Virus record (IMG/VR): IMGVR_UViG_3300025133_009608
Location: 124,001-188,000 of that record
Reading direction: 5' to 3' (one strand)
Length of the DNA stretch: 64,000 nt
Part shown: one piece after another, positions 35,731 through 63,843 of the stretch
How the letters are laid out: each line of letters begins with the position of its first letter
Position numbering within the stretch: position 1 is the stretch's first letter
The notes under the pieces: generated by a model
The model's database searches: none
The model's input: the letters and a program-made list of their open reading frames with translations, nothing else
What the model was told of the DNA's origin: nothing
Position numbers and translations under genes: made by a program

Positions 35731-36414
35731 TTTGTTTTCCTTTTGTTTAATAAAATAGATTATAAGCCCTTCTCAAAATGGGACGAAAAAAGCTCACATC
35801 CTACTTCAATTATTAGTTGAAAAAAGACATGAGCTTGGCTATCTTGGCAGTAGAACTGGAATATAAAATATATTTTATTCCGTGGCGCTTTGCGGTTCTA
35901 TTTGGCATTATTAATAATCAAAGCAAGTTCCTAGATTTTAAGCAAAAGAATAACCAGATAAAACGTTTATCTTATCTTGTTAAACACTATATATAATTAT
36001 ATAGAACTATCCTTACTGCTACATAAGAAATCGAGATTATTTATATTAAAAATATCTGATCTAATATTTTAATGAGTTGTCAACTTTTTGCCCAAAAATT
36101 TTTTGACATATCTTGAATATCAACTTCACATCTTTTTTGAACTTAAAGCATATAGAGATATAATATTAGACCAGATAGTATCAAAGTATATGGTCTTTAT
36201 TTGATATACCGTTGCATCTAATAGTTTAATTATTATAGATGATATGGTGTAAAAATATCTTTACGGGAAGTCAATTTTTTGCCCAAACACCCATTGCCGT
36301 GTCAATGGCGCAATAACCTCCGGGCCGAAAAGTTCGATAAATAAGATCGATTTATTATAGTAAAGTGTAAGGGGAAAGGCCTCTTGCGCCCTACTCACAA
36401 CCAAGGAAAATAAA

Positions 36415-36849
36415 ATGAGTATTTCACTATTCAATGATCAGAAGGATGTCTCCTCTGTTCAGACCATTCGCGAGACGATGAACGTCTCGCTCAGCGACGA
36501 TGGGACCCCCATCGTTTCGTTTGCCACAAATCGCGGCAAGGGATCTGGGGCTCAGTCTATGGCTGTCGCTGATTACGCCGAGTATGTCGCGGCTCTTAGT
36601 CACTTTGCTTCTAACGGAATTGAAGAGATTCCAACTGAAGACCTCTCTCCTGCGGAGACTGTCCGTCAGACTATCGCCCTTGATGACTCTGGAGTGATCT
36701 CATTCCGAGTGAAGAGCGGGAAGGGCTCAAAGCCAGCTAAGGTTGGCGCCGGAGAGTTCTCTGAAGTTACCGATCTTCTTCGCTCTACCCTTGAGGCGGT
36801 TGAAGCGGCTGCTGCCCGCCTCACTGGAAGTGACACTGAAGAAGAGTAG
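36415..36849 (+). CDS. MSISLFNDQK paralogue 1; internal tandem repeat, putative PC4/PUR-like ssDNA-binding protein
   Basis: two repeats IVSFATNRGKGSG / ISFRVKSGKGSK; own promoter (36333) and terminator. Confidence 0.8.
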   Translation: MSISLFNDQKDVSSVQTIRETMNVSLSDDGTPIVSFATNRGKGSGAQSMAVADYAEYVAALSHFASNGIEEIPTEDLSPAETVRQTIALDDSGVISFRVKSGKGSKPAKVGAGEFSEVTDLLRSTLEAVEAAAARLTGSDTEEE

Positions 36850-36870
36850 TAACTACTCTCAATAAAGCTA

Positions 36871-36908
36871 AGGCTCCACTGGTTTAATCCCCGGTGGAGC
36901 CTTTCTTT
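36871..36908 (+). terminator. intrinsic terminator
   Basis: AGGCTCCAC/GTGGAGCCT stem plus TTTCTTT. Confidence 0.8.
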
Positions 36909-37006
36909 GCTTAAGATGTCAAACTTTTGCCCAAGTGATCGATCTTTTCATAATAAATCCTCCTTGTTGCGATAGGTGCGATTGGCATGTCTTTTATTTA
37001 TTTTAC

Positions 37007-37213
37007 CTATATCTTCTTAAGCCCTTCGACCTCGCCTTCAAGCTCGAAAATTGAGACGTATGGTGTATTGCGTTCAATGGCCTGATCCCTTGCAGCTTTA
37101 AGTATAGCAAGCGCACTATCAAGAGCTGCATTCCAAGCGGCAGATTCCTTCGCGGAGCAATCCTCACTGCTCTTCCTCAGTCTATAATTTCTATCTGCCG
37201 CAATCTTTCTCAT
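37007..37213 (-). CDS. small protein starting MRKIAADRNY
   Basis: GGAGG RBS; shares 26 nt with neighbour. Confidence 0.7.
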   Translation of the reverse strand: MRKIAADRNYRLRKSSEDCSAKESAAWNAALDSALAILKAARDQAIERNTPYVSIFELEGEVEGLKKI

Positions 37214-37292
37214 AACAAATCCTCCGAGATTTAACACTTCTATCTTACAGATGCCCTATTGAGCAATCCCAATGCCGGCCAAGATTGAGAAG

Positions 37293-37670
37293 TTACTCAA
37301 TAGACAGATCGTCATATTCAGTCTGTCCGCCAAGATGTTGCTCCCGCCGCCTCTTTTGATTTTCGGACAGCGCTCGAACAATCTCAATCGATATATTTCG
37401 AATTGTCTCAGAGATTGTTGGATCAACATTAAGATGACCGCTGTTCTGTAAATGGCCAATCCAATGGGCTACATTGTCAACATCTTCCTCAAATCCTGCC
37501 ATATCCAGTTCTAAGCTGTAGCCCTTAGAGTTCGACCCTAATTCGTCCATAGCGTATTTATAATTTCTATCTGCCGCAATCTTTTTAATCACAGAGTCCA
37601 AATAGTCCGCTTCTTTTGCCAAGCCTCGCTCATCTAGATGAGTCGCTAGCTTAATCAGTTCTTTAATCAT
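37293..37670 (-). CDS. protein with N-terminal two-helix module plus KIAADRNY
   Basis: MIKELIKLATHLDERGLAKEADYLDSVIKKIAADRNY. Confidence 0.85.
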   Translation of the reverse strand: MIKELIKLATHLDERGLAKEADYLDSVIKKIAADRNYKYAMDELGSNSKGYSLELDMAGFEEDVDNVAHWIGHLQNSGHLNVDPTISETIRNISIEIVRALSENQKRRREQHLGGQTEYDDLSIE

Positions 37671-37818
37671 TATTGTAGATCCTCCGAGATTTATTATCTC
37701 TATATTTATTTAACAGTTCTATCTTGATTATTAATATATTGTCAAACTTTTGCCCAATAAATCAATCAACACATTTCGGCATCCTGCCGAATATTCCCCG
37801 TTAAAGCAGGAGGATGCC

Positions 37819-38220
37819 GTGTACTACGCTTCAACAATCGCTGTATTTAACGATAAAAAAGAAATATTAATTATCAAGCGAAGCGACAAGGCCGACAGCT
37901 ATCCTGGATACTGGGGGCTGCCAGGCGGAAAGATCGAGCAAAACGAATCTCCAGTACAAACTGCGGCTAGAGAATTAAAAGAAGAAGTAAACCTAGATGT
38001 TGACATTAAAGATTTAACTTTTCTTTATAATATAAAAAGAAGCCCCGATAAAGAAATCCTATCATTTGTTGCAGAAAATTGGACTGGAAATATAAAGCTG
38101 AACCCAGAAAGCACAGACTATCAATGGATTGATCCTGCTGATTTATTCTCAGTCAATCTTGTTCCCACTCCAGCAATCTTCGTAAAGCTATTAGAGATGT
38201 GGTCCGATCTTGTAATTTAA
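37819..38220 (+). CDS. NUDIX hydrolase
   Basis: GGKIEQNESPVQTAARELKEEVNL Nudix box; GTG start after AGGAGG. Confidence 0.9.
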   Translation: MYYASTIAVFNDKKEILIIKRSDKADSYPGYWGLPGGKIEQNESPVQTAARELKEEVNLDVDIKDLTFLYNIKRSPDKEILSFVAENWTGNIKLNPESTDYQWIDPADLFSVNLVPTPAIFVKLLEMWSDLVI

Positions 38221-38740: not shown

Positions 38741-38753
38741 AATGCTATCTCCA

Positions 38754-39084: not shown

Positions 39085-39264
39085 CTAAACTTCTTTACCG
39101 AGAGTGAGCTTTACTAGATTACCGGCCTCACGTTTAAGCTGACGAAGTCCCTTTCGGGCCCGAGTACCGGCAGCGGCGTTCCCAGTTGCATTCTTTACGA
39201 CATCAGTCTCGAGGCTCGCAACCAATGTTTTAATCTCTTCCCATTTACTTTCTACTGTAGCCAA
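39085..39264 (-). CDS. histone H1-like Hc1-family protein (59 aa, absent from the ORF track)
   Basis: TTG start after GGAGG; MATVESKWEEIKTLVASLETDVVKNATGNAAAGTRARKGLRQLKREAGNLVKLTLGKEV contains GNxAAGTRARK; terminator hairpin at ~39033-39063. Confidence 0.8.
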   Translation of the reverse strand: MATVESKWEEIKTLVASLETDVVKNATGNAAAGTRARKGLRQLKREAGNLVKLTLGKEV

Positions 39265-40008: not shown

Positions 40009-40025
40009 CTCTTACCCTAAATGAT

Positions 40026-40720: not shown

Positions 40721-40836
40721 GATCCTTCGTATAATGTCATATTATTCATAGTTACCCGCCCAGACCGAGATCGGCTTCGACGATCTTCATATCTATCACT
40801 TGTTTATAATAAGTCGATCTTATTTATCGAAGATTT

Positions 40837-43266: not shown

Positions 43267-43315
43267 TTGCTTTAATATAATAAATCGATCTTATTTATCG
43301 AACTTTTCCGCCCCG

Positions 43316-43993: not shown

Positions 43994-44279
43994 GATAGGC
44001 TCGCCTTGTATTGGTGTTTTCTTACACCGATATATAATAAATCGATCTTATTTATGAAAAAAGTATGCCTATCGGCAACGATTGATCAATCGTTGTAACC
44101 TCGCGGTACTTGGGCCTGAGTGGGCAATTATCACCGATAAGCGGGTCAGGCTCTCTCTCGCTTGGTCTTTCGGCTTGCGCCATACCAATACCCCTTGAGC
44201 TGCCGCGGCAGCCCTTGGCGGCTCTCAGCCAATTTTGGGCAAAATATTTGTATCTATTTTTGAATAATTCTCTGACATT

Positions 44280-45313: not shown

Positions 45314-45373
45314 GTTTCCCCCTCATTTGGTTGTTACTATAATATAATAAATCGATCTTATTTATCGAACTTT

Positions 45374-46469: not shown

Positions 46470-46667
46470 CTAATCGGTTGCTTTGCTTACATATTCACGC
46501 GCAGACTCAGCCGCCTCAACCCCAGCGACGGCGGCCTTCGCCGTCACCTCTTCGATGTCCTCGCGCAACCTTTCGGCACCACGAGGATTATCCAAAGCAT
46601 AAGCCAAAATAGCATACGCGCATACGCATATCAATGCAAAATAGATAATCTTTTTCACTTCTTCCAC
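46470..46667 (-). CDS. small membrane protein
   Basis: N-terminal TM helix. Confidence 0.65.
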   Translation of the reverse strand: MEEVKKIIYFALICVCAYAILAYALDNPRGAERLREDIEEVTAKAAVAGVEAAESAREYVSKATD

Positions 46668-46882
46668 CTATCAGTTTTTGAGAAAATCATCGTACTCTCG
46701 CGCTCGCGCATACTCTCCAGAAACTTCTTGGACTTTTCAGATCCACGATCCGAAAGATCCCGATGGTACTGCATCCGTCGCGCCCTTGCCTGATCCTTTT
46801 TGTCGGCATATCGCAGAACGTCGATTGAACCTCCGCCAGCCAAAAACCTCTCAATCTCTCGATCCATTTCTTCTCGATCCAT
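46655..46882 (-). CDS. hypothetical protein
   Basis: IERFLAGGGSI segment; GAGG RBS. Confidence 0.7.
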   Translation of the reverse strand: MDREEMDREIERFLAGGGSIDVLRYADKKDQARARRMQYHRDLSDRGSEKSKKFLESMRERESTMIFSKTDRWKK

Positions 46883-46953
46883 GCCACACCTCTCTGTTGT
46901 TAAATAGCTATAATAAATTAAGATTATTTATATTAAAACCTTCTAATATGATA

Positions 46954-47235: not shown

Positions 47236-47543
47236 AATATACCTCTGGTTTGGTCGAAGCACCTCGCCTCTCTCACCGAAATATAATAAATCGATATTAT
47301 TTATATCAAAATCTATCATCGGTAGATAGAAAGGCTTGTTAAGTTTTTGCCCAAAAATAAAGCAAAAAGCGTCAAAAACAGGAAAGGAATAAATTAGAAC
47401 GATATGAAAAGTTTTTGCCCAATATGGCAGGGGGCGAGGGCGAGTCGGGGCGGAGAAGTTCCATAAATAAGATCGATTTATTATAGGTAAGCGAGAGGGA
47501 GAGTTGGCTTCCTCCATCAACCAAAAAATAGGAAAAAGAAAAA

Positions 47544-47954: not shown

Positions 47955-47966
47955 TCAAAAACAAAG

Positions 47967-48000
47967 ATGGGGGCTTCGATTATATAATCGAGGCTCCCAT
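47967..48000 (+). terminator. hairpin after paralogue 2
   Basis: ATGGGGGCTTCGATTA/TAATCGAGGCTCCCAT with G-U pairs on the + strand. Confidence 0.65.
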
Positions 48001-48046
48001 ACCTTCGAAAAAGATGTCAAATTTTTGCCCGCTGTTCTGATAGTCT

Positions 48047-49367: not shown

Positions 49368-49371
49368 GGAC

Positions 49372-49593
49372 CTATAATGAATCGATCTTATTTATGGAAG
49401 AAGTGCGCGCGTGTGTAAAGTTTTTGCCCCGAGAGTGCGCGGGGCCGCATAGTTTTTCAAGATCTTCTTGCGCTTTCTGCGCGCAAATATCATATACGTA
49501 TTCTTCATATAGGAAAGAATACTTCTCTATTGTATCCCTGTTCAAGGCATACCCATTATTTTTTAGCCACTCCCCGAATGTAAGAATTTCCAT
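49372..49593 (-). CDS. hypothetical protein (3' end runs through regulatory motifs)
   Basis: GGAG RBS. Confidence 0.5.
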   Translation of the reverse strand: MEILTFGEWLKNNGYALNRDTIEKYSFLYEEYVYDICAQKAQEDLEKLCGPAHSRGKNFTHARTSSINKIDSL

Positions 49594-50907: not shown

Positions 50908-51106
50908 AATCTCATTCTCCTTTTCGGGCCTGTTTGTCTTCCCTTCACTTTACTATAATGAATCGATCTTATTTATCGAGCTTTTGTTGGTCGCTCATGC
51001 CACGATACAGAAGGGCGTAAAGTTTTTGCCCAAGGATATGAAAAAGGATATGAAAGAAGCCCCGTTGAAGCCGCCCGTTTTTGGGCGGCTTCTTGGCGCG
51101 TCCGCC

Positions 51107-51535: not shown

Positions 51536-51603
51536 TTTATTTCCGTTCTTTGGAGGGTAGTAGTGAGGGGATTATCCCTTCATATCTCTATAATGAATCG
51601 ATC

Positions 51604-51807
51604 TTATTTATCAAGAGTTGCTGGCTTTAGGTATCCTATCTCTCGCAGGTAATCATAAGCATCGGCCATTGTTGCTCTAAAATGCTCAGTCCTATGTTCA
51701 GACGGGCAATCCTCGTCTGCCTGACCGCACATCGCGACCAATCGATCTGCTAGTTGTTTATTTTGATCTTTTAGATCTTCAATAACTGTACTTGTACTAA
51801 CTGGCAT
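51604..51807 (-). CDS. hypothetical protein
   Basis: GGAG RBS; promoter 51857. Confidence 0.7.
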   Translation of the reverse strand: MPVSTSTVIEDLKDQNKQLADRLVAMCGQADEDCPSEHRTEHFRATMADAYDYLREIGYLKPATLDK

Positions 51808-51949
51808 GGCAATGTCTCCTCTGGCCGAAGACGGGCATTCCGTCTCCTTTCATGTTTCTATAACGAATCGATCTTATTTATCGAGCAAACCCGCCCCAAG
51901 GTGGGAAGAACCCCTCTTTGCACGTGCAAAGAGGGGTTGGCAATATTGA

Positions 51950-52369
51950 CTACTCCTGTGGAGCCAGTCGTTCCGCTGCCGCCTCGACCGCCTCAAGGGT
52001 TCCTCGCAAGAGTTGGGCAACATCGGAAAACTCCGCCGAGTTTACCTTGGCTGGCTTGGCACCCTTCCCGCTCTTGACACGAAACGTGATCACGCCGTTA
52101 TCCATAGCGATAGTCCGACGAACAGTATCCGCAGGAGAAAGGTTCTCTTCTGCCTGTTCCTCGATTCCATTTTTGGCAACCTCCTCAAGAGCCGTAACGT
52201 ATTCGGCATAATCGGCAACAGCCATAGACTGCGCTCCAGAACCCTTGCCGCGATTCGTTGCAAACGAAACGATCGGAGTCCCATCATCGCTGAGCGAAAC
52301 GCTCATCGTCTCCCGAATAATCTGAACGGAAGATTCGACCTTTTGATCATTAAACAGCGAAATAGACAT
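51950..52369 (-). CDS. MSISLFNDQK paralogue 3
   Basis: start re-assigned (GGAG RBS); promoter 52458; hairpin ~51909-51938. Confidence 0.82.
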   Translation of the reverse strand: MSISLFNDQKVESSVQIIRETMSVSLSDDGTPIVSFATNRGKGSGAQSMAVADYAEYVTALEEVAKNGIEEQAEENLSPADTVRRTIAMDNGVITFRVKSGKGAKPAKVNSAEFSDVAQLLRGTLEAVEAAAERLAPQE

Positions 52370-52883
52370 AATATTCTCCATTGTGGGGAAACTGGTCGTC
52401 CCACGTATCGCCCGTGATGGGCTGCGTTCGGGAGGCATCTTGCGCCCCTTACACTTACCTATAATGAATCGATCTTATTTATGGAAGTTTTCTCGGCCAT
52501 CGACACTATGCTAAAAATGAAAATCTTTTGCCCAAATCTGAAAACAAGACTAAGCCGCACCTCAGATTTGGGCATCACTCTAATGGACTATTCCTCAACG
52601 CTGCATACTGTCACGGGTCGGCTACCACTCAGCAGTATCCGTAGATCGCGAATGATAAACGATAATGCAATAACCATATCCCTTTCCATATTCCACTTTG
52701 CACTATTCATTCGTAACTCATACCTCTCTATTAGATTTTCGATATCTTTTTCCACTTCTAATTCCCCCTTGTCTTTATAGCATTTTTTTATAATAAATCG
52801 ATCTTATTTGTCGAAACAACCTCGGAGCCTACGGCGGGCAATGCCTTGAGCTTTGGCTCCAAAGCTCAAGGCGGCACCTATCT

Positions 52884-53793: not shown

Positions 53794-53937
53794 CGGACAA
53801 CAAATCTGAGATTTATTTTGAACGCCTCGCCGCGAGGTCTGGGACTATTGGCGGTAACTCGCCTTCCCTACTATTATAGACGACAAGAATGGCCGCTGGC
53901 GGACAACAAATCTGAGATTTATTTTGAACGCCTCGCC
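53794..53937. repeat. 38-bp perfect direct repeat, 2 copies
   Basis: CGGACAACAAATCTGAGATTTATTTTGAACGCCTCGCC at 53794-53831 and 53900-53937. Confidence 0.9.
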
Positions 53938-54167
53938 ATGGCCTCCATCATAACAACGAGGCACAGCCCACTCAGGGACAACGAATCAAAAATAAATCGA
54001 CTATTGAAGTTTTTTCTTCAGCACAATGGCGATATAGCAAGACAATGCAGATAATACATTTAATGCCATCAAGCCCCGATCGCCGAGAATAAAAGTTGAT
54101 ACAATAAATAATAATACATTTATTATAATAAATGTTTCAAATAAATGTATGAAAAGTTTTTGCCCCA

Positions 54168-54479
54168 TTATAGGCACTCATCTCTTCGGGCATCGGAGTA
54201 AAGCCCCGCAACCGATGACGCCAACTCGTTCTCTTCTTGAATCCATATTGAATAACCTCGTCGATATTCTTCGATGTCAATGGTTCCATTTTGAAACTGT
54301 AAAACTTTTGCCCTATACTCAGTACGGGCATCATCACGGAGTTCTTGTATTTCTAAGATTTTGCCCACCACAGAATAACAATCTCTATTAGAGATTATCA
54401 GCCAACCAAGCCATGTAGCAGGAGATAGAAAGATAATGGTAATAATAAACGCCATTATCTTTCTATTGTCCACACGCAC
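54168..54479 (-). CDS. membrane-anchored coiled-coil protein
   Basis: N-terminal TM; GGAG RBS. Confidence 0.7.
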   Translation of the reverse strand: MRVDNRKIMAFIITIIFLSPATWLGWLIISNRDCYSVVGKILEIQELRDDARTEYRAKVLQFQNGTIDIEEYRRGYSIWIQEENELASSVAGLYSDARRDECL

Positions 54480-55196: not shown

Positions 55197-55293
55197 TAAC
55201 TTTCATATCGATCTTATTTATCGAAAAGTTGGATTGCCCGCTGTCCGTAAAAAATATTACGATCTGGGCAAAAGTTTTGCGCATGTAAATAAA

Positions 55294-55714: not shown

Positions 55715-55908
55715 TTTTCTATCTCCTTATGCTTTACTATAATAAATCGATCTTATTTTCCGAATAAAGGCGGAAGCCCACAAAGAAAATGAGGTTTTGT
55801 CCAGACCCCAAACTGGAGGCTTGCCTTGGGAGTCTCGTTTTCTGCCAGAGTTTATTCCAAGGTTTGTTTGCAGGTTGGCATCCTGCCTGCACTCCGAAGC
55901 CGTAATCA

Positions 55909-56163: not shown

Positions 56164-56225
56164 TCTTTCTATTCTCCCTTCATATCACTATAATGAATCG
56201 ATCTTATTTATGGAAGAATCCTTTA

Positions 56226-57256: not shown

Positions 57257-57349
57257 TTTTCATCTCCCTTCATATCACTATAATGAATCGATCTTATTTA
57301 CCTAAGAATATTCTGTTACTTTGGGTTTGGGCGACACTGGGCAAAAAGT

Positions 57350-58018
57350 TTACCCTTCTGCGTATTCTCCTCCGATTCCGCAACAAGAGTATCTTGTGCC
57401 ATCTATATCCCAGTTTTCAAGTATATGATGATGCCCGAAGTAGTAATGAGCGGGCCGATGGTTAGAGAGTCTAATAACATTTTGAAGATTTTTCGGGGTG
57501 ACCTGTGAGTCGCGACCACTGCGATTCAGACTCACACATAGTGGAGCCTCGTGCGCGACTACAATATCAGGCCTTCCGGTGTCAAATGCTTCAAAAAAAT
57601 CCGAAAACTCTGATGCGGTAGGTGTTTCGTAGTCCCACCACGTAAGACCGTCCACTCTCATGTGTTTGTCAATAGACTCGGCCCCACCAAAGAACAGGTG
57701 GCTCTTTCCATCAAGCTCAATCGTGTGCGCTCGGGTTACCCAAAAAAATCCAGATACGATTTCGACAACTTTGGATTTTTGCTCCAACTTGTGTGCACGC
57801 CACCTATCCCAGTTCTCGTGATTCCCTCCGCAGCTATACCATATCGGGCTATCAAGGTTTCTTTCTTTGAAATACTTGACTACCGAACAGGAGTCGTTCC
57901 AAGATACTCCCGAGTCTCCAACTTGAACGATAATATCAACATTGTTTTTTCTGGCTATTTGATCAATCTCAGCGAAGGCCGATACCTCTCCGTGCAGATC
58001 TCCAACATACATTATCAT
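57350..58018 (-). CDS. calcineurin-like metallophosphoesterase
   Basis: GDLHG, QVGD, GGNHEN, HEAP, FGHHH. Confidence 0.9.
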   Translation of the reverse strand: MIMYVGDLHGEVSAFAEIDQIARKNNVDIIVQVGDSGVSWNDSCSVVKYFKERNLDSPIWYSCGGNHENWDRWRAHKLEQKSKVVEIVSGFFWVTRAHTIELDGKSHLFFGGAESIDKHMRVDGLTWWDYETPTASEFSDFFEAFDTGRPDIVVAHEAPLCVSLNRSGRDSQVTPKNLQNVIRLSNHRPAHYYFGHHHILENWDIDGTRYSCCGIGGEYAEG

Positions 58019-58028
58019 CGCAAACCCC

Positions 58029-58400
58029 TCACTGCCCAAAGCCGCACAGCGTCTTGTTTAGGCTCCAATCGGTTTGTGCGTTTAGCTCTTTTACTGTATC
58101 CGAAATAATGGCGATAAGTAAGGCTTCGACAAGCTGAATGGGAGCACTCGGAGGAATGGCCATTTCCCTCAAAGAAAACTCTCCGCCGACAACTGCCGCA
58201 ATCGAAAAGATGACCCCATTGCTTCCATCATTTCGACAGGCCGCCGAAACGACAGAGCCACCACTATCTGCAATGCGACTAAGATTATCAAGCCTTTCTT
58301 GAACCTCCTGATCGCTCAGCCTTTTCGCAACAGGCCTCTCAGCTGGATCTACAAAGTAAATCGGAGAGCCTACGCAATCATCACTCGCTTTATCAAACAT
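58029..58400 (-). CDS. hypothetical protein
   Basis: AAGGAG RBS; promoter 58421. Confidence 0.7.
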   Translation of the reverse strand: MFDKASDDCVGSPIYFVDPAERPVAKRLSDQEVQERLDNLSRIADSGGSVVSAACRNDGSNGVIFSIAAVVGGEFSLREMAIPPSAPIQLVEALLIAIISDTVKELNAQTDWSLNKTLCGFGQ

Positions 58401-58471
58401 TTTCTATCTCCTTATGCTTTACTATAATAAATCGATCTTATTTATCGAACAAGTCATGGAGTTTGTCCTCC

Positions 58472-58705
58472 TTACAGGCTTGCATTGTAGGCTTCGATCC
58501 CATGCGCCATGCCCTCTTGCATGGCTTCTTCGATTGCGGCCTTCCCAGCTCGACGCTCGACCGTTTCGTGAGCCTTCTCTACCCGAGAAGCAGAGGCGCG
58601 ACGACGCTTGCCCCTCCCTCCCCCGTTCCCGCCGTGACGACGAGCCTCATACTTCTTTCCATTGGCATTACCGCCACGGCCACTGCATCCTTTTGCTCTA
58701 TTCAC
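58472..58705 (-). CDS. small basic Gly/Arg-rich protein
   Basis: GGAGG RBS; promoter 58726. Confidence 0.6.
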   Translation of the reverse strand: MNRAKGCSGRGGNANGKKYEARRHGGNGGGRGKRRRASASRVEKAHETVERRAGKAAIEEAMQEGMAHGIEAYNASL

Positions 58706-58800
58706 TTTCCGCCTCCCTTCATATCTCTATAATAAGTCGATCTTATTTATCGCAACAATCTTTTGGTCCCTATTTTGGGCAAAAAGTTGTCATCCGAGGC

Positions 58801-59046
58801 CTACCCCACCTCTACGAGATAGGCGAAGTTTGTCCGAATAAATCCATCCCAATGAGCACGAAGCCTATCCGCCGTTGTCTCGGCCACGCACAGTCTGTGT
58901 ACGCCCGTCATGGGAGATGTCATTATATACTCACCTCCCCTGCGCGAGAGGTGAACAGTCCATCCCTCATAGGCGGGGATTATAATCTCCCAACTACGAT
59001 GCAGGGTCAAGCTCAGAACGTCGGTATTTGAAATATTTATTTTCAT
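58801..59046 (-). CDS. hypothetical protein
   Basis: AGGAGG RBS; promoter 59066. Confidence 0.7.
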   Translation of the reverse strand: MKINISNTDVLSLTLHRSWEIIIPAYEGWTVHLSRRGGEYIMTSPMTGVHRLCVAETTADRLRAHWDGFIRTNFAYLVEVG

Positions 59047-59082
59047 CTCATCCTCCTTTCACTTACCTATAATGAATCGATC

Positions 59083-59280
59083 TTATTTATCGAGATTCTT
59101 CGAACATGCTCCTGACTCTATTAGTGCCATTGCAGTGCGCCCGAACCACCCTTGAAGCTCCCATGCAAGGCCAGTATCAATGAGGTGTTGCCATGCTTTG
59201 ATAATAGTTTCTTCATCGGTGCATGGAATAAATCCTTCTGCTATTCCTATCGCGGTAAAATCACTCATTTTTCGCCCCAT
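59083..59280 (-). CDS. conserved small phage protein
   Basis: AWQHLIDTGLAWELQGWFGRTA. Confidence 0.7.
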   Translation of the reverse strand: MGRKMSDFTAIGIAEGFIPCTDEETIIKAWQHLIDTGLAWELQGWFGRTAMALIESGACSKNLDK

Positions 59281-59602
59281 TGTTTATAACGGCCGTTTTG
59301 ACCCACAAAGTGGATTGCCCAGTATCATCGCATATTTTTCTGTAAGTTGTGCTTCTATATAGCTGGCCAGCCTTGACCTTCCCATCTTTATGATCTTTTC
59401 TGCAAGTATGTGTCCGTGTCCGTACTTTTCGCTCCCAGTATCCATAGCTCAGTGTATATCCAGAGTTCTCAAGCCAAGGACGATCAGACCCTGCTACGGC
59501 CTCGGACTCACAGCCACACGAGCCTTCTGACGCATGATAGTTACGGCCGCACCATTCGCAATCAACATAGTAACAGTGCCAATCATCGGGTATATTCTGC
59601 AT
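59261..59602 (-). CDS. Cys/His-rich hypothetical protein
   Basis: CEWCG..H..C.C, HTCRKDH; promoter 59622. Confidence 0.7.
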   Translation of the reverse strand: MQNIPDDWHCYYVDCEWCGRNYHASEGSCGCESEAVAGSDRPWLENSGYTLSYGYWERKVRTRTHTCRKDHKDGKVKAGQLYRSTTYRKICDDTGQSTLWVKTAVINNGAKNE

Positions 59603-59638
59603 CTCATCCTCCCTTCACTTACCTATAATGAATCGATC

Positions 59639-59866
59639 TTATTTATGGGAGTTTTGACGACTCACTACCTCGAACTCTTTGGCCTCCTCCCAGCAGCCAA
59701 AGCCCCCCATAACACCTGGAAAGACCTCAACATCTGGGGCTTCCTCATTCTCCTCGGTCAGCATAACCCAAAGCCCATCATCATCCATAACTGCGGCTAC
59801 CTCAAAAACGAAGTGAGCCTCCTCTGGACGCGCGCGAACATAACGAACCAAATCACCGATCTTCAT
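59639..59866 (-). CDS. hypothetical protein
   Basis: start re-assigned to MKIGDLV (GAGG RBS). Confidence 0.65.
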   Translation of the reverse strand: MKIGDLVRYVRARPEEAHFVFEVAAVMDDDGLWVMLTEENEEAPDVEVFPGVMGGFGCWEEAKEFEVVSRQNSHK

Positions 59867-59907
59867 TGTTTTCCTCGCCGCCCAGTTCTCTGGGCAAAAA
59901 CTTTGCA

Positions 59908-60429
59908 TCATTTTATCTTGCGGAACGAAAGAGAAGCCCCACAGCCTTTATGATAATAGGTGGCCCTTGGGTTTTTTGGCATACGGCTTCTGGTGCCAAC
60001 TACACCGCACCGATCGCAGATAAGCTGAACATTTTTAGGCTGAGTTTTTCGACCAAGCCCTGCTGTATCAAGGGTGTGACACCGATGATTTTTTCTAACT
60101 CCAGTGATCCGAGTCATCATTGATTGAAACTCATAGCCGTGGCCCCCAAGGTTTTTGACCTGAAGAAGATAGGCGTGTACCATCTCGTGAATAAGAGTTT
60201 CTCGGATCTTGCTGGCATCCATATTTTCATTTCTAAAAATACCAAGACTAAGGTCGATCTTCGTAGGGGTAGAAACTCCCATCCGCTTTGTAAAGTGACA
60301 CCGACCCGCAGTGGAGGTAAGGCGACTATTCCATTTTACGGGGATTGTAGAAATCATCCCTTCAAAGTGGGCTTGATTGATCGCGTCGAACATTTGATTC
60401 AGCATTACTTCGGTCATCTCATCCTCCAT
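59908..60429 (-). CDS. SprT-like zinc metalloprotease
   Basis: WNSRL.STAG, LIHEMVH, GHG..F, CDRCG; promoter 60437. Confidence 0.88.
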   Translation of the reverse strand: MEDEMTEVMLNQMFDAINQAHFEGMISTIPVKWNSRLTSTAGRCHFTKRMGVSTPTKIDLSLGIFRNENMDASKIRETLIHEMVHAYLLQVKNLGGHGYEFQSMMTRITGVRKNHRCHTLDTAGLGRKTQPKNVQLICDRCGVVGTRSRMPKNPRATYYHKGCGASLSFRKIK

Positions 60430-60495
60430 ACACTTGCCTATAATGAATCGATCTTATTTATGGGAGTTATTGGATTATTTAATGAAAGATGGAAA

Positions 60496-60572
60496 TGGCT
60501 GGGGCAGTAGGACTCGAACCTACAACGGCCGGGGTAACAACCCGGTGCGACTGCCAGTGTCGCCTCACCCCA
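60496..60572 (-). tRNA. trnN: tRNA-Asn(GUU), second divergent copy
   Basis: CCGGG-TTGTTAC-CCCGG anticodon arm; GTAGG-TTCGAGT-CCTAC; G73; CCA. Confidence 0.85.
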
Positions 60573-60608
60573 TCTGCACGTAAGTACGTTTATATTAGCA
60601 TAGAAAAG

Positions 60609-60684
60609 TGGTGGGTCGAGAGGGGCTCGAACCCTCGGCCGATCGGTTAAAAGCCGATTGCTCTACCAACTGAGCTACCAACCC
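60609..60684 (-). tRNA. trnK: tRNA-Lys(UUU)
   Basis: ATCGG-CTTTTAA-CCGAT anticodon arm; canonical D and T arms; CCA. Confidence 0.93.
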
Positions 60685-60692
60685 TTCTGATC

Positions 60693-61118
60693 CTACTTGC
60701 TAAGCGCGTGCGCCGCCCAAAACTCTCTTGCCGCATCCGCATCGTGGTTATCTGGGTCGTCAGGGTTTTGAGGGGCCAGCGGGCCACCATAAACAGTGAA
60801 CAACGTGGCCGCCTCACCATCTCGAACCCCAATCACCTGAACATACCCAACTGGCCGCGTGGGACGATCAATCATGCGATCTGCCCACGTGCGTGGATCA
60901 TTTGCGCTAAATCGCACAATCCGTTCTACTTCAGTTTCTAATACTGGCTCATCGCCCATAGCTGGGCCGTGAAGCCCGCAAGGAACAGTCCCCAACTCAG
61001 CGGGAATCTCCACTTGACGAATAAAGAACCCATCTACCTGCTCTGCGATCACGGCGTTCACGTGCGCTTGCTGCTCATCGGAAATGCCGTGATCGGCGTG
61101 CAAAACTGTTACTTCCAT
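60693..61118 (-). CDS. hypothetical protein
   Basis: AGGAG RBS; promoter 61162. Confidence 0.75.
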   Translation of the reverse strand: MEVTVLHADHGISDEQQAHVNAVIAEQVDGFFIRQVEIPAELGTVPCGLHGPAMGDEPVLETEVERIVRFSANDPRTWADRMIDRPTRPVGYVQVIGVRDGEAATLFTVYGGPLAPQNPDDPDNHDADAAREFWAAHALSK

Positions 61119-61290
61119 TTTCTATCTCCTTTCTGGGCTGAGTTATTCTGCCCTTCATATCACTATAATGAATCGATCTTATTTATGGGAGTTATTTCGT
61201 AAGCACACCTGCGTGTATAGTCTTATGAAAAACTTTTGCCCAAAAAAAGAAGGGGGCCGCAGGCGGCCCCCTTCTCGCTCTTTGCTCGCC

Positions 61291-61950
61291 CTATGCGTAG
61301 TGGATGGGGATCGGAGCGCGCGCATCAAACGCAACCCAGTCCTGATCCAGCCATAGATCGGGGCGATGTTTTGCCACTCGCGCCCACTCGATCCGAAATC
61401 GAGTATATTCAAACTTCTTTATCGTGCCGTCAGCCTTTTTGTACTTCCGAATATCGGCACGTAGCTTGACAGTCTCAGGGGGCAACTCTCCGAGGTCTTG
61501 AGCCCTGATCACTTCCGAGGCGTTGATCCGCCTCATCTGCAGTTCTCCGCCCATCTCCCTCACCAGAATCACCCAAAGGGGAGTCTCAGCCGCCGCCATA
61601 GCGGTGGGAATCTTGTAATGAAGGGTCAAATCACGGTTGCCGTAACCTCGGCCCTTTGACCCCTTGAGGGCAACTGGCACCATCTCTACAATGGCCCCCT
61701 CAACAATCGTCATAGGGATCACATCATCGAACAGGCCTTGGCCTCGGCCTGCCTGAAGCGGGCGACCGATGCGATCAATCTTTCCGCTCTTGGCCTTGCC
61801 ATCCCTCGCAGGGGGCAACATGTCGGCCAGAGGGCCGAGCCATGCACACACCGCGCCGAAACCAGCACCGATCCCAGCCAGCGATCCACCTGCCTCGGCA
61901 ATACGGCAAGACGCTTCTAACTCTAAATCGTTGATAAAGCTCATTTTCAA
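61291..61950 (-). CDS. hypothetical protein
   Basis: GGAGG RBS; promoters 61987 and 62072; hairpin ~61250-61272. Confidence 0.75.
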   Translation of the reverse strand: MKMSFINDLELEASCRIAEAGGSLAGIGAGFGAVCAWLGPLADMLPPARDGKAKSGKIDRIGRPLQAGRGQGLFDDVIPMTIVEGAIVEMVPVALKGSKGRGYGNRDLTLHYKIPTAMAAAETPLWVILVREMGGELQMRRINASEVIRAQDLGELPPETVKLRADIRKYKKADGTIKKFEYTRFRIEWARVAKHRPDLWLDQDWVAFDARAPIPIHYA

Positions 61951-62171
61951 TCCTCCGAGAAAGGTGGTTTGTCCTCTCTACACTTACCTATAATGAATCG
62001 ATCTTATTTATAAAGTTTTTGCCCAAGTCACTCACTCCCCAGCAAAGAGGCCGAAGGCAGTTCGTGTAATCCATGATAAATCGATCTTACTTATCGAAAA
62101 GTGATAAGATGAAAGCGCGGAGCAGGGAGAACCACAAACCCCTGCTCCGCTGGAGTCGCACCACTGGCGCA

Positions 62172-62381
62172 TTACCAAGACTTGCGGTGCTTCGCGTAAC
62201 GCTGAGCCTTGCCCTTTCCTCGTCGCCCGTCGCCCCTTGAGGCCTTTGATTGATGCTTTCCAGCACCCGCCCCTGCCCGAAGAATAAGGCCAATCGCCCC
62301 CTCGTCGCGGCGGCGAGGTGCCGAAACAACAATCCGCTTTTTTTTCCTCTCGTTTACGATTTGGGGCTTTTTGGCCATCAC
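62172..62381 (-). CDS. small highly basic protein
   Basis: GGAGG RBS; promoter 62398. Confidence 0.65.
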   Translation of the reverse strand: MMAKKPQIVNERKKKRIVVSAPRRRDEGAIGLILRAGAGAGKHQSKASRGDGRRGKGKAQRYAKHRKSW

Positions 62382-62414
62382 ATCCTCCCTATACTTCGCT
62401 ATAATGAATCGATC

Positions 62415-62615
62415 TTATTTACGGGAAACGAGGCCGCCCATTGGAGCGTATTCAAAGATATTCGGATTTGTTAGAATGTCCCTTGTTTTTTCTCGGATAT
62501 ACTCAAGCGTACACGCCGAGAAGGTACGGAGGCAATACCCCTCTGTTCCGTTATGATAAATGGCATGAGCATAGCAAAGCTCGCCCTCGCGCGCTTCAAT
62601 GTATATTCCTTCCAT
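62415..62615 (-). CDS. hypothetical protein
   Basis: GAGG RBS; promoter 62660. Confidence 0.6.
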   Translation of the reverse strand: MEGIYIEAREGELCYAHAIYHNGTEGYCLRTFSACTLEYIREKTRDILTNPNIFEYAPMGGLVSRK

Positions 62616-62746
62616 TTCCTCATCCCTCCGAGAAAGGTGGTTTGTCCTCTCTACACTTACCTATAATGAATCGATCTTATTTATGGAAGTTATTGCTTAT
62701 AAGTATAGCCCGAAGCGGGGCGCGGATATCCGCGCCCCTATGGGAG

Positions 62747-63301
62747 TTATCCGACCCTCTCGCCTCCGATGGATACGTACTCATAAGAGCCGGCGGTAAG
62801 CTTGAACCTGCGGAACTTGCTCGCTGGAGCCTGACGCTGGATCCAGCGTTTTACCAGCGTCTTGTCAGCGGAGGTTACCGCCTTGTAAACTCCGCGCTGT
62901 ACGGTGTCTTTGGAGACAATCAAGCCCCAGAGGTAAAGATCCCCTTGAGGGTCTGACGCAAGTCGGGCCAACCCGTCTTGTACATAGTTGTAGTCGGTAG
63001 AGCCGCCACCAGCGGCGATCCGAGAAATACTTTTCTCGTAACTTGCGGACTGCTCCGCAAGAGCCTTGCGGCAAGTTTCAAGGTCAACACCTTGAACTCC
63101 GCAGTTCGCGAACACCGTCTCGGCAGTCATCTCGGCCAGCACGATCGCCGATCGCTCCAACAGGGACAGGTAACTAACCTTTCCGTTTACCGTGTAATGG
63201 GCGATCTCGCCAGAAGTCTTGCTCTCATAAGAACGAAGATGAAGGAAGCCGCCAGCTACGGCCGCCGAGTTTGCAGTTTGAATATCCATGATAAACTCCA
63301 A
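62747..63301 (-). CDS. hypothetical protein
   Basis: promoter 63347; hairpin ~62718-62738. Confidence 0.75.
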   Translation of the reverse strand: MEFIMDIQTANSAAVAGGFLHLRSYESKTSGEIAHYTVNGKVSYLSLLERSAIVLAEMTAETVFANCGVQGVDLETCRKALAEQSASYEKSISRIAAGGGSTDYNYVQDGLARLASDPQGDLYLWGLIVSKDTVQRGVYKAVTSADKTLVKRWIQRQAPASKFRRFKLTAGSYEYVSIGGERVG

Positions 63302-63479
63302 CGCAAAGAGGGGAAAAGTAAAAGTGGTTTGTCCTCTCTACACTTACCTATAATGAATCGATCTTATTTATGGAAGTTATATAGAAACATTTGAGACATG
63401 AGTTGGGCGGCCGAAGAAAACCACAAACCTCGGCCGCCCTGCGAGAATCACCGCCAGACTCGATCGCAACTCAAAAGTT

Positions 63480-63770
63480 TTAGTATGCCACCTGAACCCA
63501 TTTTGTGGACTCAGGTGTGCTAACGCTCTCCAGACCGTCATACTCAGATATTACATACCTGCACCCCTCATGGCATTCCACCTCAAGCGAGGCGTTCGGC
63601 CCAGAGGCCGCCTCCTCTCCGAGCGCGAGCACACACTCTACGAGAAGGGGATCGTGCCTATTATTGTAATAAAAAGACTCAGGATCAGCCCCACGAGCAG
63701 TCAGCCATTCTTCTGCCGCAGATGACAACCCGAAGCCGCCATAACAACTATTCACTACTACTTTAAACAT
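63480..63770 (-). CDS. conserved phage hypothetical protein
   Basis: VVNSCYGGFGLS, RHDPLLV, ISEYDGLE; promoter 63792. Confidence 0.8.
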   Translation of the reverse strand: MFKVVVNSCYGGFGLSSAAEEWLTARGADPESFYYNNRHDPLLVECVLALGEEAASGPNASLEVECHEGCRYVISEYDGLESVSTPESTKWVQVAY

Positions 63771-63843
63771 TTTCTATTCTCCCTTCATATCACTATAATG
63801 AATCGATCTTATTTATGGAACAAGTGCGTTCGTGCCTACGGGG

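What the first reader, a model, noticed from the sequence alone, without database searches (positions are those of the whole stretch)
36333..63820. 28 near-identical promoters with a conserved dyad spacer defining a monocistronic early-gene island
Seen: TTC(C/G)AT-AAATAAGATCGATT(C/T)AT-TATAG(G/T/A) recurs 28 times, 27 of them in the last ~23 kb. Most copies lie within ~110 nt of an RBS/start. The only two + strand copies precede + strand genes. The geometry is -35-like / 17 nt / -10-like, but the spacer, normally unconstrained in sigma-70 promoters, is the most invariant part. It is an imperfect dyad, AATAA-GATCGAT-TTATT (AATAAG-ATCGA-CTTATT at 40805 and 58726). Inference: the spacer is an operator for one phage master regulator (repressor or MerR-like spacer-binding activator), or the whole 29-mer is read by a phage-specific polymerase or sigma factor.
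Basis: partly seen in the sequence, partly recalled or inferred. Interest (0 to 1): 0.8.

Follow-up and report, generated by a model that had tools for sequence, protein, structure and literature searches.

The report
Repeated promoter cassettes, phage early island
An uncultured 317-kb marine jumbo phage drives its block of small early-type genes with about 31 almost identical promoter cassettes. Their unusually invariant middle part looks like a phage-specific recognition block and recombination patch, not a symmetric operator.

Summary
The window holds 26 canonical copies of TTCSAT-AAATAAGATCGATTYAT-TATAGN, plus one degenerate copy and five copies of a variant class. At least five more canonical copies lie just past the window end. 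All belong to one ~31-kb island of a 316,664-bp marine phage contig.

Every copy points the same way as the gene that follows it. The start codon sits a median 22 nt after the -10-like hexamer. The geometry fits a sigma70-family holoenzyme: A-tract, -35-like hexamer, 17 nt, TA at -12/-11, GTG, then a Shine-Dalgarno site.

They are promoters, but several details of the reading need correcting:
- The dyad is no better than chance, and the commonest variant does not fold at all.
- Only about half of the units hold one gene, and terminators are rare.
- The hexamers match sigma70 poorly; 7 of 31 copies pass a lenient test.
- The motif carries 64 bits where 14-18 would suffice.

Related phages carry a different invariant block at the same position. 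Variants cluster by neighbourhood, and upstream and downstream halves are mosaic.

Best reading: these are cassettes like the PeSL promoter cassettes of T4-type phages, read by host RNA polymerase core with a phage-specified factor. That factor could be the RpoH-like sigma or an RNAP-bound activator. Plain sigma70 early promoters kept uniform by recombination remain a strong rival. No transcript data exist. It is a new variant of a known kind.

The parts
36333..36361 (+). canonical promoter copy (TTCGAT / T-variant / TATAGT) before + strand gene 36415-36849
40803..40831 (-). canonical copy, GATCGAC variant, TATAAA; heads a ~10-gene run
43274..43302 (-). canonical copy (TTCGAT / T-variant / TATATT)
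44031..44059 (-). canonical copy (TTTCAT / T-variant / TATATA) before the DUF7227 gene
45341..45369 (-). canonical copy (TTCGAT / T-variant / TATATT)
47459..47487 (+). canonical copy before + strand gene 47544-47954 (paralog of 36415-36849)
49371..49399 (-). canonical copy (TTCCAT / C-variant / TATAGG)
50952..50980 (-). canonical copy (CTCGAT / C-variant / TATAGT)
51587..51615 (-). canonical copy (CTTGAT / C-variant / TATAGA)
51857..51885 (-). canonical copy (ATTCGT variant), with a stable hairpin upstream
52458..52486 (-). canonical copy before 51950-52438, the third paralog of the + strand genes
52787..52815 (-). canonical copy (TTCGAC / T-variant / TATAAA)
55736..55764 (-). canonical copy; leader family TATAGTAAAGCATAAGGAGATAG
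56187..56215 (-). canonical copy; leader family TATAGTGATATGAAGGGAG
57277..57305 (-). canonical copy (TTAGGT); heads a 3-gene unit that includes DUF3228
58421..58449 (-). canonical copy before 58029-58400 and the metallophosphatase gene 57350-58018
58726..58754 (-). canonical copy, GATCGAC variant
59066..59094 (-). canonical copy
59622..59650 (-). canonical copy (TCCCAT); the upstream ORF stops at the TAA inside the motif
60437..60465 (-). canonical copy (TCCCAT) before the SprT-like gene
61162..61190 (-). canonical copy (TCCCAT), 60 nt after terminator 61247-61276
61987..62015 (-). canonical copy fused to a GGGCAAAAACTTTAT element
62398..62426 (-). canonical copy (TCCCGT)
62660..62688 (-). 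canonical copy; leader family TATAGGTAAGTGTAGAGAGGACAAACCAC
63347..63375 (-). canonical copy, same leader family
63792..63820 (-). canonical copy; further copies follow beyond the window end (L015:5977-9957)
62070..62098 (-). decayed copy (AAGTAAGATCGATTTAT followed by CATGG, no TATAG), 83 nt upstream of the copy at 62009
55207..55225 (-). truncated copy (TTTTCGAT AAATAAGATCGAT, then unrelated sequence)
   Evidence: L015:18552
47280..47308 (-). variant-class promoter TTTTGA-TATAAATAATATCGATTTAT-TATATT (TTGATA-18-TATATT)
46907..46935 (-). variant-class copy before the 75-aa SutA-RBD-like gene 46655-46882
36020..36048 (-). variant-class copy (weak)
18933..18961 (-). variant-class copy upstream of tRNA-Met and the run of genes leading to the sigma gene
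3558..3586 (-). variant-class copy before the PP-loop (QueC/TilS-like) gene 2855-3556
13067..13918 (-). phage sigma factor, RpoH-like, with regions 2-4; candidate reader of the motif (untested)
61247..61276 (-). the one strong intrinsic terminator inside the dense part of the island

Best explanation
These are about 31 copies (26 in the window) of one promoter cassette belonging to an uncultured 317-kb marine jumbo phage.

Each cassette has the same layout:
- an A-tract at about -40;
- a -35-like TTCSAT;
- an invariant 17-bp spacer;
- TATAG(N) at the -10 position;
- a short discriminator ending in GTG;
- an inferred start site 7-8 nt after the -10;
- GGAGG, then a start codon about 22 nt after the -10.

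The cassettes load a multi-subunit, sigma-dependent RNA polymerase (the host core enzyme) onto the phage's early-type, hyperplastic gene island. That island encodes an ArdC-like anti-restriction protein, SprT, NUDIX, DNA ligase, a CCA-adding enzyme, tRNAs and many ORFans.

The invariant 21-bp block (spacer plus TATA) is asymmetric. It carries far more information than site finding or sigma70 needs. In related phages a different invariant block occupies the same position. It is therefore most likely the docking site of a phage-specified specificity factor. That could be the phage's RpoH-like sigma, or an RNAP-bound activator working in the manner of T4 MotA/AsiA. It is unlikely to be a dyad operator.

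The identical cores also serve as short homology patches. Through them promoter-gene cassettes are duplicated, inverted and shuffled, as with the PeSLs of T4-type phages. This keeps the copies homogenised.

Shown here: the repeats, their orientation and geometry, the excess information, the mosaicism, and the lineage-specific replacement. Inferred: the start site, the polymerase, and the existence and identity of the factor.
For: Enrichment and orientation: 30 hits against 0.11 expected. Every copy is co-oriented with the next gene, and the start codon is a median 22 nt after TATAGN.

Holoenzyme-like extent of conservation: A-tract, -35-like hexamer, core, GTG and Shine-Dalgarno site.

The same architecture occurs in 61 copies from four related contigs, with TA and GTG..AAGG in the same register. 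There the spacer block is different (CATCGGT) and the -35 is nTGAAA.

Three further relatives each have their own invariant promoter:
- CGTGCAW-N8-GCAGCTAAAG-TATAAT;
- CCCTTGACA-N9-TCAAGGG-TATATT;
- TCTGACTTTT-N12-CGTCTA.

Poor sigma70 match: T at the sixth -10 position in 13 of 31 copies. Only 7 of 31 reach >=4/6 plus >=5/6. The generic scan flagged 3 main copies plus one variant-class copy.

Excess information: Rsequence is 64 bits against 14-18 bits needed.

The exact 22-mer is found in no other phage among 2.9 million viral contigs and 241 million metagenome records. It occurs only on this contig and one 100% identical strain.

The phage encodes a full sigma with regions 2-4. It keeps the melting residues Y430 and W434. 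It differs from both E. coli RpoD and RpoH in the -35 recognition helix (SREWARK against TRERIRQ and SAERVRQ) and at positions 437 and 440.

A 75-aa SutA-RBD-like, possibly RNAP-binding, protein sits behind a variant-class promoter.

Evidence for recombination:
- Variants cluster by neighbourhood (p 0.003-0.005).
- -35 variants and leader families occur in mosaic combinations.
- The island contains decayed, truncated and tandem copies.
- One promoter-gene module is present three times, in both orientations.

Precedents:
- PeSL cassettes (PMC2839356, PMC4122927).
- Extra consensus in T4 early promoters, and the MotA box of middle promoters (PMC2988021).
Against: - No transcript 5' ends are available. 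No RNA run was listed.
- The island carries functions expected immediately after entry, such as ArdC-like anti-restriction. That argues for recognition by unmodified host sigma70 holoenzyme.
- The T-variant copies (TCGATA-16-TATATT or TATAGT, 9 of 12) are acceptable sigma70 promoters.
- An alternative -10 frame, YATTAT, has the key A and T in 31 of 31 copies.
- Invariance could come from recent spread and gene conversion alone.
- The copies were found through the core, which inflates its apparent conservation.
- No link between the sigma gene and the motif was shown.
- No sigma orthologs were found on the relatives' contigs, so co-variation could not be tested.
- Only about 85 kb of the 317-kb contig was inspected.
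Confidence: 0.45

Rival explanations
1. These are ordinary early promoters read directly by host sigma70 holoenzyme. The invariant spacer has no reader of its own. The copies are identical because the cassette spread recently and is kept uniform by recombination and gene conversion between copies (PeSL-like concerted evolution). There may be modest RNAP-spacer contacts, as in the extended-consensus early promoters of T4.
For: - The geometry is exactly -35/16-17/-10, with an A-tract where the proximal UP subsite lies.
- T at -12 and A at -11 are invariant.
- The T-variant copies score 9 of 12.
- The gene content is early-type.
- Spatial clustering and mosaicism of variants show active recombination.
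- T4 early promoters carry 'additional regions of consensus' (PMC2988021).
- PeSLs are conserved over about 100 bp (PMC2839356).
- Relative L021 has the same design with consensus hexamers.
Against: - 18 of 31 copies lack T at -7, and the -35 matches only 1-4 of 6.
- Substitutions in the flanking -35 and leader positions are about 30 times denser than in the 21-bp core of the same cassettes. Uniform recent spread does not predict this.
- The closest relatives keep TA and GTG but carry a different invariant block and no sigma70-like -10.
Confidence: 0.3
2. The invariant spacer is an operator. A phage-encoded repressor (for early shut-off) or activator binds it at all copies simultaneously, while host sigma70 reads the hexamers.
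For: - There is excess information at a position sigma70 does not read.
- Relative L021 has a highly significant 8-bp dyad across -35 and spacer (z -5.0).
- Cluster A mycobacteriophage stoperators are a precedent for about 30 asymmetric sites per genome (own knowledge).
Against: - The dyad here is no better than in shuffles, and it is broken in the majority variant.
- No HTH, MerR, Cro or Arc family was hit among 64 island proteins.
- The 16-17-bp spacer is already optimal, so MerR-type untwisting is not called for.
Confidence: 0.15
3. The contiguous ~22-bp block ending in TATAG is the promoter of a phage-encoded RNA polymerase, either T7-like single-subunit or a virion or non-virion multisubunit enzyme. 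Initiation would be at the G of TATAG.
For: - There is a resemblance to T7-class promoters (ATTCATTATAGG against ACTCACTATAGG, from my own recollection of the T7 consensus).
- Conservation is contiguous, and excess information is also a feature of T7 promoters.
Against: - Conservation continues upstream into a -35-like hexamer and an A-tract, where a T7-like enzyme makes no contact.
- No DxDGD motif, and no RNAP family hit, in the 85 kb and roughly 125 proteins examined.
- The best structural-gene hits are to group-2-type jumbo phages, which are reported to lack an RNAP and to encode sigma factors (PMC7824862).
- The related L022-type promoters have no TATAG.
Confidence: 0.06

Closest known systems
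PeSL (promoter-early stem-loop) mobile regulatory cassettes of T4-type phages (Arbiol 2010, PMC2839356; Comeau 2014, PMC4122927)
   Same: - Many near-identical promoter+SD cassettes sit between small ORFan genes of a hyperplastic early region.
- Each lineage has its own consensus.
- Decayed, tandem and truncated copies occur.
- There are signs of recombination between copies.
- The elements are concentrated away from the structural genes.
   Different: - Only 8 of 31 copies have a stable stem-loop upstream.
- The hexamers are far from sigma70 consensus, whereas PeSL promoters are near-consensus with T at -7.
- The spacer is invariant.
- The phage is a 317-kb uncultured marine jumbo phage, not shown to be T4-type.
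- No mini-circles or cassette polymorphisms were demonstrated.
T4 early promoters (extended UP/-35/TGn/-10 promoters) and T4 middle promoters (MotA box + -10, sigma appropriation) (PMC2988021)
   Same: - Tens of copies lie ahead of prereplicative genes.
- They carry extra consensus beyond the hexamers.
- In the middle class, a phage activator box lies upstream of a -10 element and replaces -35 recognition.
   Different: - There is no TGn and no TTGACA-like -35.
- There is no TGCTT box, and no MotA or AsiA family hit.
- The conserved block abuts the -10 and is completely invariant, whereas MotA boxes tolerate much variation.
Host-takeover module of Bacillus phage SPO1 (own knowledge; Stewart et al. 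1998)
   Same: A cluster of about two dozen small early genes with many closely spaced strong promoters and ribosome sites.
   Different: The SPO1 promoters are consensus sigma-A promoters and the units end in terminators. Here the consensus is non-canonical and terminators are few.
T7-class single-subunit RNAP promoters
   Same: A contiguous block of about 22 bp ending in TATAG, with a large information excess.
   Different: Conservation extends upstream to -35/-40. No RNAP gene was seen. A sigma factor is present.
Stoperators and start-associated sequences of mycobacteriophages (own knowledge)
   Same: About 30 asymmetric, co-oriented conserved sites in short intergenic gaps, overlapping stop codons and preceding start codons.
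   Different: Those are 13-bp repressor or translation-associated sites without promoter geometry. No repressor was identified here.

Membership tests
sigma70-family (-35/-10) promoter | Two elements separated by 16-18 bp, upstream of and co-oriented with genes | tested here: met
   TTCSAT-17-TATAGN (or TCSATA-16). All copies are co-oriented with the next gene. The start codon is a median 22 nt downstream.
sigma70-family (-35/-10) promoter | Hexamers close to TTGACA / TATAAT, with A at -11 and T at -7 (housekeeping sigma70 specifically) | tested here: inconclusive
   A at -11 in 31 of 31 copies, T at -7 in 13 of 31. The -35 matches 1-5 of 6. Seven of 31 pass a lenient rule. The alternative frame YATTAT has both key bases but no -35.
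sigma70-family (-35/-10) promoter | Transcription starts 5-9 nt after the -10 | not testable with these tools
   No RNA run was listed. The phage is uncultured.
PeSL cassette | Early promoter directly preceded by a conserved stem-loop or terminator | tested here: not met
   Only 8 of 31 copies have a hairpin with z < -2 within 70 nt upstream. In several cases the upstream gene stops inside the motif.
PeSL cassette | Located between ORFans of a hyperplastic region, with evidence of recombination at the elements | tested here: met
   - The island holds about 70 small ORFs, most without a family.
- Variants cluster by position, and halves are mosaic.
- There are remnants, tandem copies and a triplicated module.
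PeSL cassette | Host phage is a T4-type myovirus | not tested
   Only weak partial hits of one 929-aa protein to group-2-type jumbo phages. No hallmark T4 genes lie in the window.
MerR-type spacer-binding activation | Over-long 19-20 bp spacer containing a dyad operator, and a MerR-family gene | tested here: not met
   The spacer is 16-17 bp. The dyad is not significant. No MerR or HTH hit in the island.
N4-type hairpin promoter (virion RNAP) | Stable 5-7 bp DNA hairpin with a 3-nt loop at the promoter | tested here: not met
   DNA folding gives 0 to -2.9 kcal/mol, with z between -0.95 and +1.0.
T7-like ssRNAP promoter | Cognate RNAP gene in the genome; conservation confined to about -17..+6 | tested here: inconclusive
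   No RNAP gene in 85 kb of 317 kb. Conservation extends to about -40 relative to the inferred start.
T4 middle (MotA/AsiA) promoter | TGCTT MotA box 12+/-1 bp from a TAnnnT -10; MotA and AsiA genes | tested here: not met
   There is no TGCTT box in the motif. No MotA or AsiA Pfam hit among 64 island ORFs. The architecture (box plus YATTAT) is only analogous.
T4 late (gp55) promoter | TATAAATA at -13..-6 ahead of late or structural genes | tested here: inconclusive
   The variant class contains an exact TATAAATA, and the main class contains SATAAATA. These occur ahead of early-type genes, not the structural block. No gp55 or gp33 homolog was identified.

The most novel reading that the evidence does not exclude
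A clade of uncultured marine jumbo phages uses lineage-specific 'hyper-extended -10' promoters. An invariant 7-21-bp block directly upstream of TA(-12/-11) is read by a phage-encoded specificity factor that co-diversifies with it. That factor could be the RpoH-like sigma with an altered region 4.2/2.4, or a small RNAP-binding protein. The same identical blocks act as integron-like attachment points for shuffling early-gene cassettes.
Probability: 0.25. Interest if true: 0.7.

Novelty: new variant of a known kind. Interest (0 to 1): 0.5.

Why it matters
If the block is read by a phage factor, it would be a compact, orthogonal promoter/factor pair from a phage group with no cultured member. It would also show how jumbo phages without their own polymerase redirect the host enzyme to some 30 sites at once.

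The comparison across relatives (five different invariant promoters on a shared early-island gene set) offers a natural series for studying how promoter and reader co-evolve.

They extend PeSL-type cassette shuffling beyond the T4-like phages.

If they are plain sigma70 promoters, the finding is an ordinary, if extreme, case of concerted evolution of phage early promoters.

Tried and rejected
- **Dam or restriction logic of the GATC/ATCGAT in the spacer.** GATC (286 observed, 306 expected) and ATCGAT (43 against 39) are neither enriched nor avoided. Methylation control remains untested. An N6/N4 methyltransferase gene exists at 6056-6694.
- **Sigma32-type consensus** (TTGAAA-N11-17-CCAT): 1 hit against 2 expected.
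- **Sigma54 promoters:** none in the window, although relatives have many.
- **The GGGCAAAA-NN-TTGACA element as the real -35 of sigma70 promoters.** No -10 follows at 16-18 nt in any copy.
- **Hairpin or cruciform promoter:** no folding signal.
- **Phage RNAP:** no DxDGD motif and no RNAP family hit.
- **Natural variation in close relatives.** All other contigs are 99.96-100% identical, so selection on orthologous promoters could not be measured.
- **Read laying on four runs**. One roughly 85-95% relative (X11) has contigs that break exactly at the promoter copies. The joints have short sides and were treated as repeat artefacts.
- **RNA runs:** none was listed.
- **Sigma orthologs for co-variation:** none in the viral contigs.
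- **Ligase-linked relative L013 and PolyA_pol-linked L020:** no repeated promoter.
- **The two + strand genes as candidate regulators.** No family was hit. The atlas hits are viral hypotheticals only.

Full report
**Source and context**

The window is positions 124,004-188,003 of IMGVR_UViG_3300025133_009608, also recorded as Ga0208299_1000006. This is a 316,664-bp contig from a marine metagenome. It has no near match among 50,697 deposited phage genomes.

One 929-aa protein gives weak partial hits to jumbo phages of Erwinia, Pseudomonas (Lu11), Ralstonia and Agrobacterium (Atu_ph07).

Almost all genes lie on the - strand. The left 36 kb encodes:
- a 5'-3' exonuclease, a ClpP-like prohead protease and glycosyltransferases;
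- an N6/N4 DNA methyltransferase and a PP-loop ATPase;
- tRNAs and a tmRNA;
- a sigma factor.

The right part is a GC-richer block of small ORFs.

**The observation**

The 17-mer core occurs 30 times at <=2 mismatches, against 0.11 expected. After sorting the window holds:
- 26 canonical copies, 24 on the - strand and 2 on the + strand;
- one decayed copy at 62092 and one truncated copy near 55219;
- five copies of a variant class, TTTTGA-TATAAATAATCTCGATTTAT-TAT.

Walking off the window end showed five more canonical copies and one with a ruined -10. The first copy in transcription order lies about 3.8 kb beyond position 64000, and upstream of it the motif stops.

All 24 exact 22-mer matches of the whole 317-kb contig fall inside this ~31-kb island. 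The exact 22-mer occurs in no other contig of the viral collection. In the JGI metagenome collection it occurs only on a 100% identical strain.

**Anatomy**

A position-by-position profile shows random sequence up to about 11 nt before the 17-mer. Conservation then runs as follows:
- an A-rich patch;
- TTCSAT at 1.1-1.45 bits per position;
- 17 positions of which 14 are invariant, with a C/T polymorphism at position 14;
- an invariant TATA that was not part of the search, then G in 21 of 26 copies;
- two free positions;
- AAGTG-W-A-R-GGAGG, after which conservation ends.

If the start site is 7-8 nt after TATAGN, the elements sit at about -40, -35..-30, -12..-7 and -3..-1, with the Shine-Dalgarno site at +3. 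This is the footprint of a sigma-dependent multisubunit polymerase.

The start codon follows the -10-like hexamer by a median 22 nt, with a range of 15-126. Thirty of 32 copies have a start within 60 nt.

The motif contains stop codons in all three frames. Several upstream genes end at the TAA inside AAATAA.

The dyad does not hold up. AATAA/TTATT is intact only in the T-variant. The majority C-variant has a mismatch. Single-strand folding gives z-scores of -0.6, +1.0 and -0.95, and the commonest form has 0 kcal/mol.

'Monocistronic' is half right. Fourteen of 26 promoter intervals hold one gene and the rest hold 2-10. Only one strong terminator (61247-61276) and a handful of weak ones lie on the coding strand. 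Often there is no room for one between a stop codon and the next promoter. Transcripts are probably nested read-throughs.

**Which enzyme?**

A single-subunit or other phage polymerase is unlikely:
- Conservation extends well upstream of -17.
- No DxDGD motif and no polymerase family appears in about 85 kb and roughly 125 proteins.
- Jumbo phages of the group that gives the best hits are described as lacking an RNAP and carrying sigma factors (PMC7824862).

Against unaided sigma70:
- The best -35 frame matches 1-5 of 6.
- T at -7 is present in 13 of 31 copies.
- Only 7 of 31 pass a lenient rule.
- The generic scan flagged just three main copies plus one variant-class copy.

An alternative -10 frame, YATTAT, has the key A and T in all copies but then lacks any -35 or TGn.

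The motif carries 64 bits. Locating 31 sites needs 14 bits in the phage alone, or 18 bits if a 4-Mb host genome is included. An excess of this size was classically taken to mean a second reader, or recent common descent (Schneider's argument for T7 promoters, from my own knowledge).

**Relatives**

I used island proteins to find relatives: a CCA-adding/PolyA_pol enzyme, and a metallophosphatase with about 100 marine homologs at 40-57% identity. I fetched nine related loci.

Four of them (L022, L023, L025, L026) share the ArdC / AAA_33 / metallophosphatase / SprT / DUF5658 gene set. Together they carry 61 copies of their own promoter, with consensus T.AAAtca.TTT.taCATCGGTTActt....gTg.aagg.

Aligned on the TA, the GTG..AAGG block falls in the same register as in the window. 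The -35 (nTGAAA) lies 17 nt upstream. The invariant block is CATCGGT, not AAGATCGATTYAT, and the sixth -10 position is again free.

Three more distant relatives each have a different invariant promoter:
- L027: CGTGCAW-N8-GCAGCTAAAG-TATAAT.
- L021: CCCTTGACA-N9-TCAAGGG-TATATT, with consensus hexamers and a real dyad (z -5.0).
- L024: TCTGACTTTT-N12-CGTCTA, which looks like an extracytoplasmic-function (ECF) sigma promoter.

In the four lineages with a -35/-10 layout, the conserved block abuts the upstream edge of the -10. The architecture is therefore old, and the block is lineage-specific. This is the pattern expected if a phage-encoded reader co-evolves with it.

**Candidate readers**

The sigma at 13067-13918 aligns end to end with proteobacterial RpoH, scoring 165 bits, below the equivalog cut-off of 323.

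I aligned it with E. coli RpoH and RpoD. It keeps Y430 and W434 (RpoD numbering). It has A and K at positions 437 and 440. Its -35 recognition helix reads SREWARK, where RpoD has TRERIRQ and RpoH has SAERVRQ. So it differs at two positions (586 and 589) that are conserved in both host sigmas.

From established knowledge of region 4.2, this predicts a -35 preference different from TTGACA/TTGAAA. That is compatible with TTCSAT but is no proof.

A 75-aa protein behind a variant-class promoter matches the SutA RNAP-binding domain just below threshold (27.3 against 29.3 bits). An Hc1-like histone-like protein is also present. No HTH, MerR, MotA or AsiA family was found among 64 island proteins.

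**Recombination**

Variants are not scattered at random:
- Neighbouring copies share -35 variants (9 identical adjacent pairs against 3.9 expected, p 0.005).
- Neighbouring copies share the C/T state (23 against 15.8, p 0.003).
- Leader families such as GATATGAAGGGAG occur behind six different -35 variants. That mosaic implies crossovers within or next to the invariant core.

The island also contains:
- tandem copies 67 and 83 nt apart, plus a decayed and a truncated copy;
- one promoter-gene module present three times, twice inverted.

This is the behaviour described for PeSL cassettes of T4-type phages. There, recombination between conserved promoter elements excises and inserts ORFans (PMC2839356, PMC4122927).

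The cassettes here differ in three ways. They mostly lack the stem-loop (8 of 31). Their hexamers are non-consensus. Their spacer is invariant.

**Weighing**

That these are promoters for a sigma-dependent polymerase is well supported; I put it at about 0.85. Whether a phage factor is needed is not settled.

For a phage factor:
- the poor sigma70 match;
- the excess information concentrated where sigma70 does not read;
- a roughly 30-fold lower substitution density in the core than in the adjacent -35 and leader of the same cassettes;
- lineage-specific replacement of the block;
- a sigma with altered reading residues.

For sigma70 alone:
- the early-type gene content (anti-restriction must act at once);
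- acceptable T-variant copies;
- T4's precedent of extra consensus in sigma70 early promoters (PMC2988021);
- clear evidence of homogenising recombination.

I put the phage-factor reading at 0.45, plain sigma70 with concerted evolution at 0.30, an operator for a repressor or activator at 0.15 (it could coexist with either), and a phage polymerase at about 0.06.

**Verdict**

This is a genuine, striking promoter family and a new variant of a known kind: phage early-promoter cassettes of the PeSL type. The sigma or specificity-factor alternative remains open and can be tested with simple in vitro transcription.

Noticed in passing
window 36093, 36284, 36932, 37755, 47352, 47420, 48030, 49429, 51031, 52533, 54165, 61241, 62024 (-); 44237, 55266, 57339, 58777, 59892 (+); L022, L023, L025, L026: A second recurrent element, GGGCAAAA-NN-TTKACA: about 26 copies in the window and 40-43 per ~20 kb in four related contigs. 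It occurs on both strands, often as inverted pairs forming long palindromes. It often lies 7-40 nt upstream of a promoter copy or just after a terminator. No -10 follows it, so it is not a sigma70 promoter. Unlike the promoter core, it is conserved across lineages.
   Followed up: partly
L022, L023, L026 (e.g. L023:4529-4550, 4663-4725, 6037-6099, 8206-8268): Relatives carry arrays of sigma54-like TTGGCAYG-N4-TTGCA sequences, often as palindromic pairs next to GGGCAAAA elements. None is present in the window.
   Followed up: partly
window 11596-11999 (-): A phage-encoded tmRNA (Rfam 96.9 bits) with tag peptide ANNNNHFYAAALAA. There are also 7 tRNAs, two of them (60496-60684) inside the promoter island.
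   Followed up: no
window gene starts 20934, 21723, 28623, 31123, 31623, 32624, 33166, 37670 (-): Eight genes begin with the same ~25-residue N-terminus, MIKELIKLA(N/T)(E/H)LD.RGL.KEADYLD. They lie near a ClpP-like prohead protease gene. This may be a shared capsid-targeting or propeptide segment.
   Followed up: no
window 36000-64000: CCGG is about 5-fold depleted (15 observed, 72 expected) and CTAG 3-fold depleted (16 against 46) in the island only. In the left 36 kb CCGG is 88 against 94. This may be restriction-site avoidance in the early region.
   Followed up: no
window 46655-46882 (-) and 39085-39264 (-): A 75-aa protein with a sub-threshold match to the SutA RNAP-binding domain (27.3 bits, cut-off 29.3), and a 59-aa Hc1-like histone H1-like protein (E 8.5e-12).
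   Followed up: partly
window 36415-36849 (+), 47544-47954 (+), 51950-52438 (-): Three paralogs (74% amino-acid identity, 79.5% nucleotide identity), each with an internal duplication (..DDGTPIVSF.TNRGKGSG..) and each behind its own promoter copy. No family was hit. Atlas neighbours are viral hypotheticals.
   Followed up: partly
window 29651-30784: A stretch of about 1.1 kb without a convincing ORF, AT-rich, with short direct repeats (GAGGTCTTTTTTCTG) and a TATAAATA. AT-rich gaps also occur at 47960-48760 and 53800-54170. These could be origin or packaging candidates.
   Followed up: no
window 6056-6694 (-) and 2855-3556 (-): An N6/N4 DNA methyltransferase with a DPPY motif, and a PP-loop (TilS/QueC-like) ATPase behind a variant-class promoter. 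The C-variant spacer contains GATTC (GANTC) and every spacer contains GATC. Methylation control of the promoters was not tested.
   Followed up: no
window 58000-63900, run X11: A hydrothermal-vent metagenome holds a relative at roughly 85-95% identity. Its short contigs start and end exactly at promoter copies (60461, 61186, 61987, 62421, 62689). This is as expected if it has the same repeated core at the same sites.
   Followed up: partly
L024:13227-14429: A TnpB/Cas12f-like (OrfB_IS605) gene sits in the early island of a related phage contig, with a second ~120-nt copy of its downstream sequence 10 kb away.
   Followed up: no
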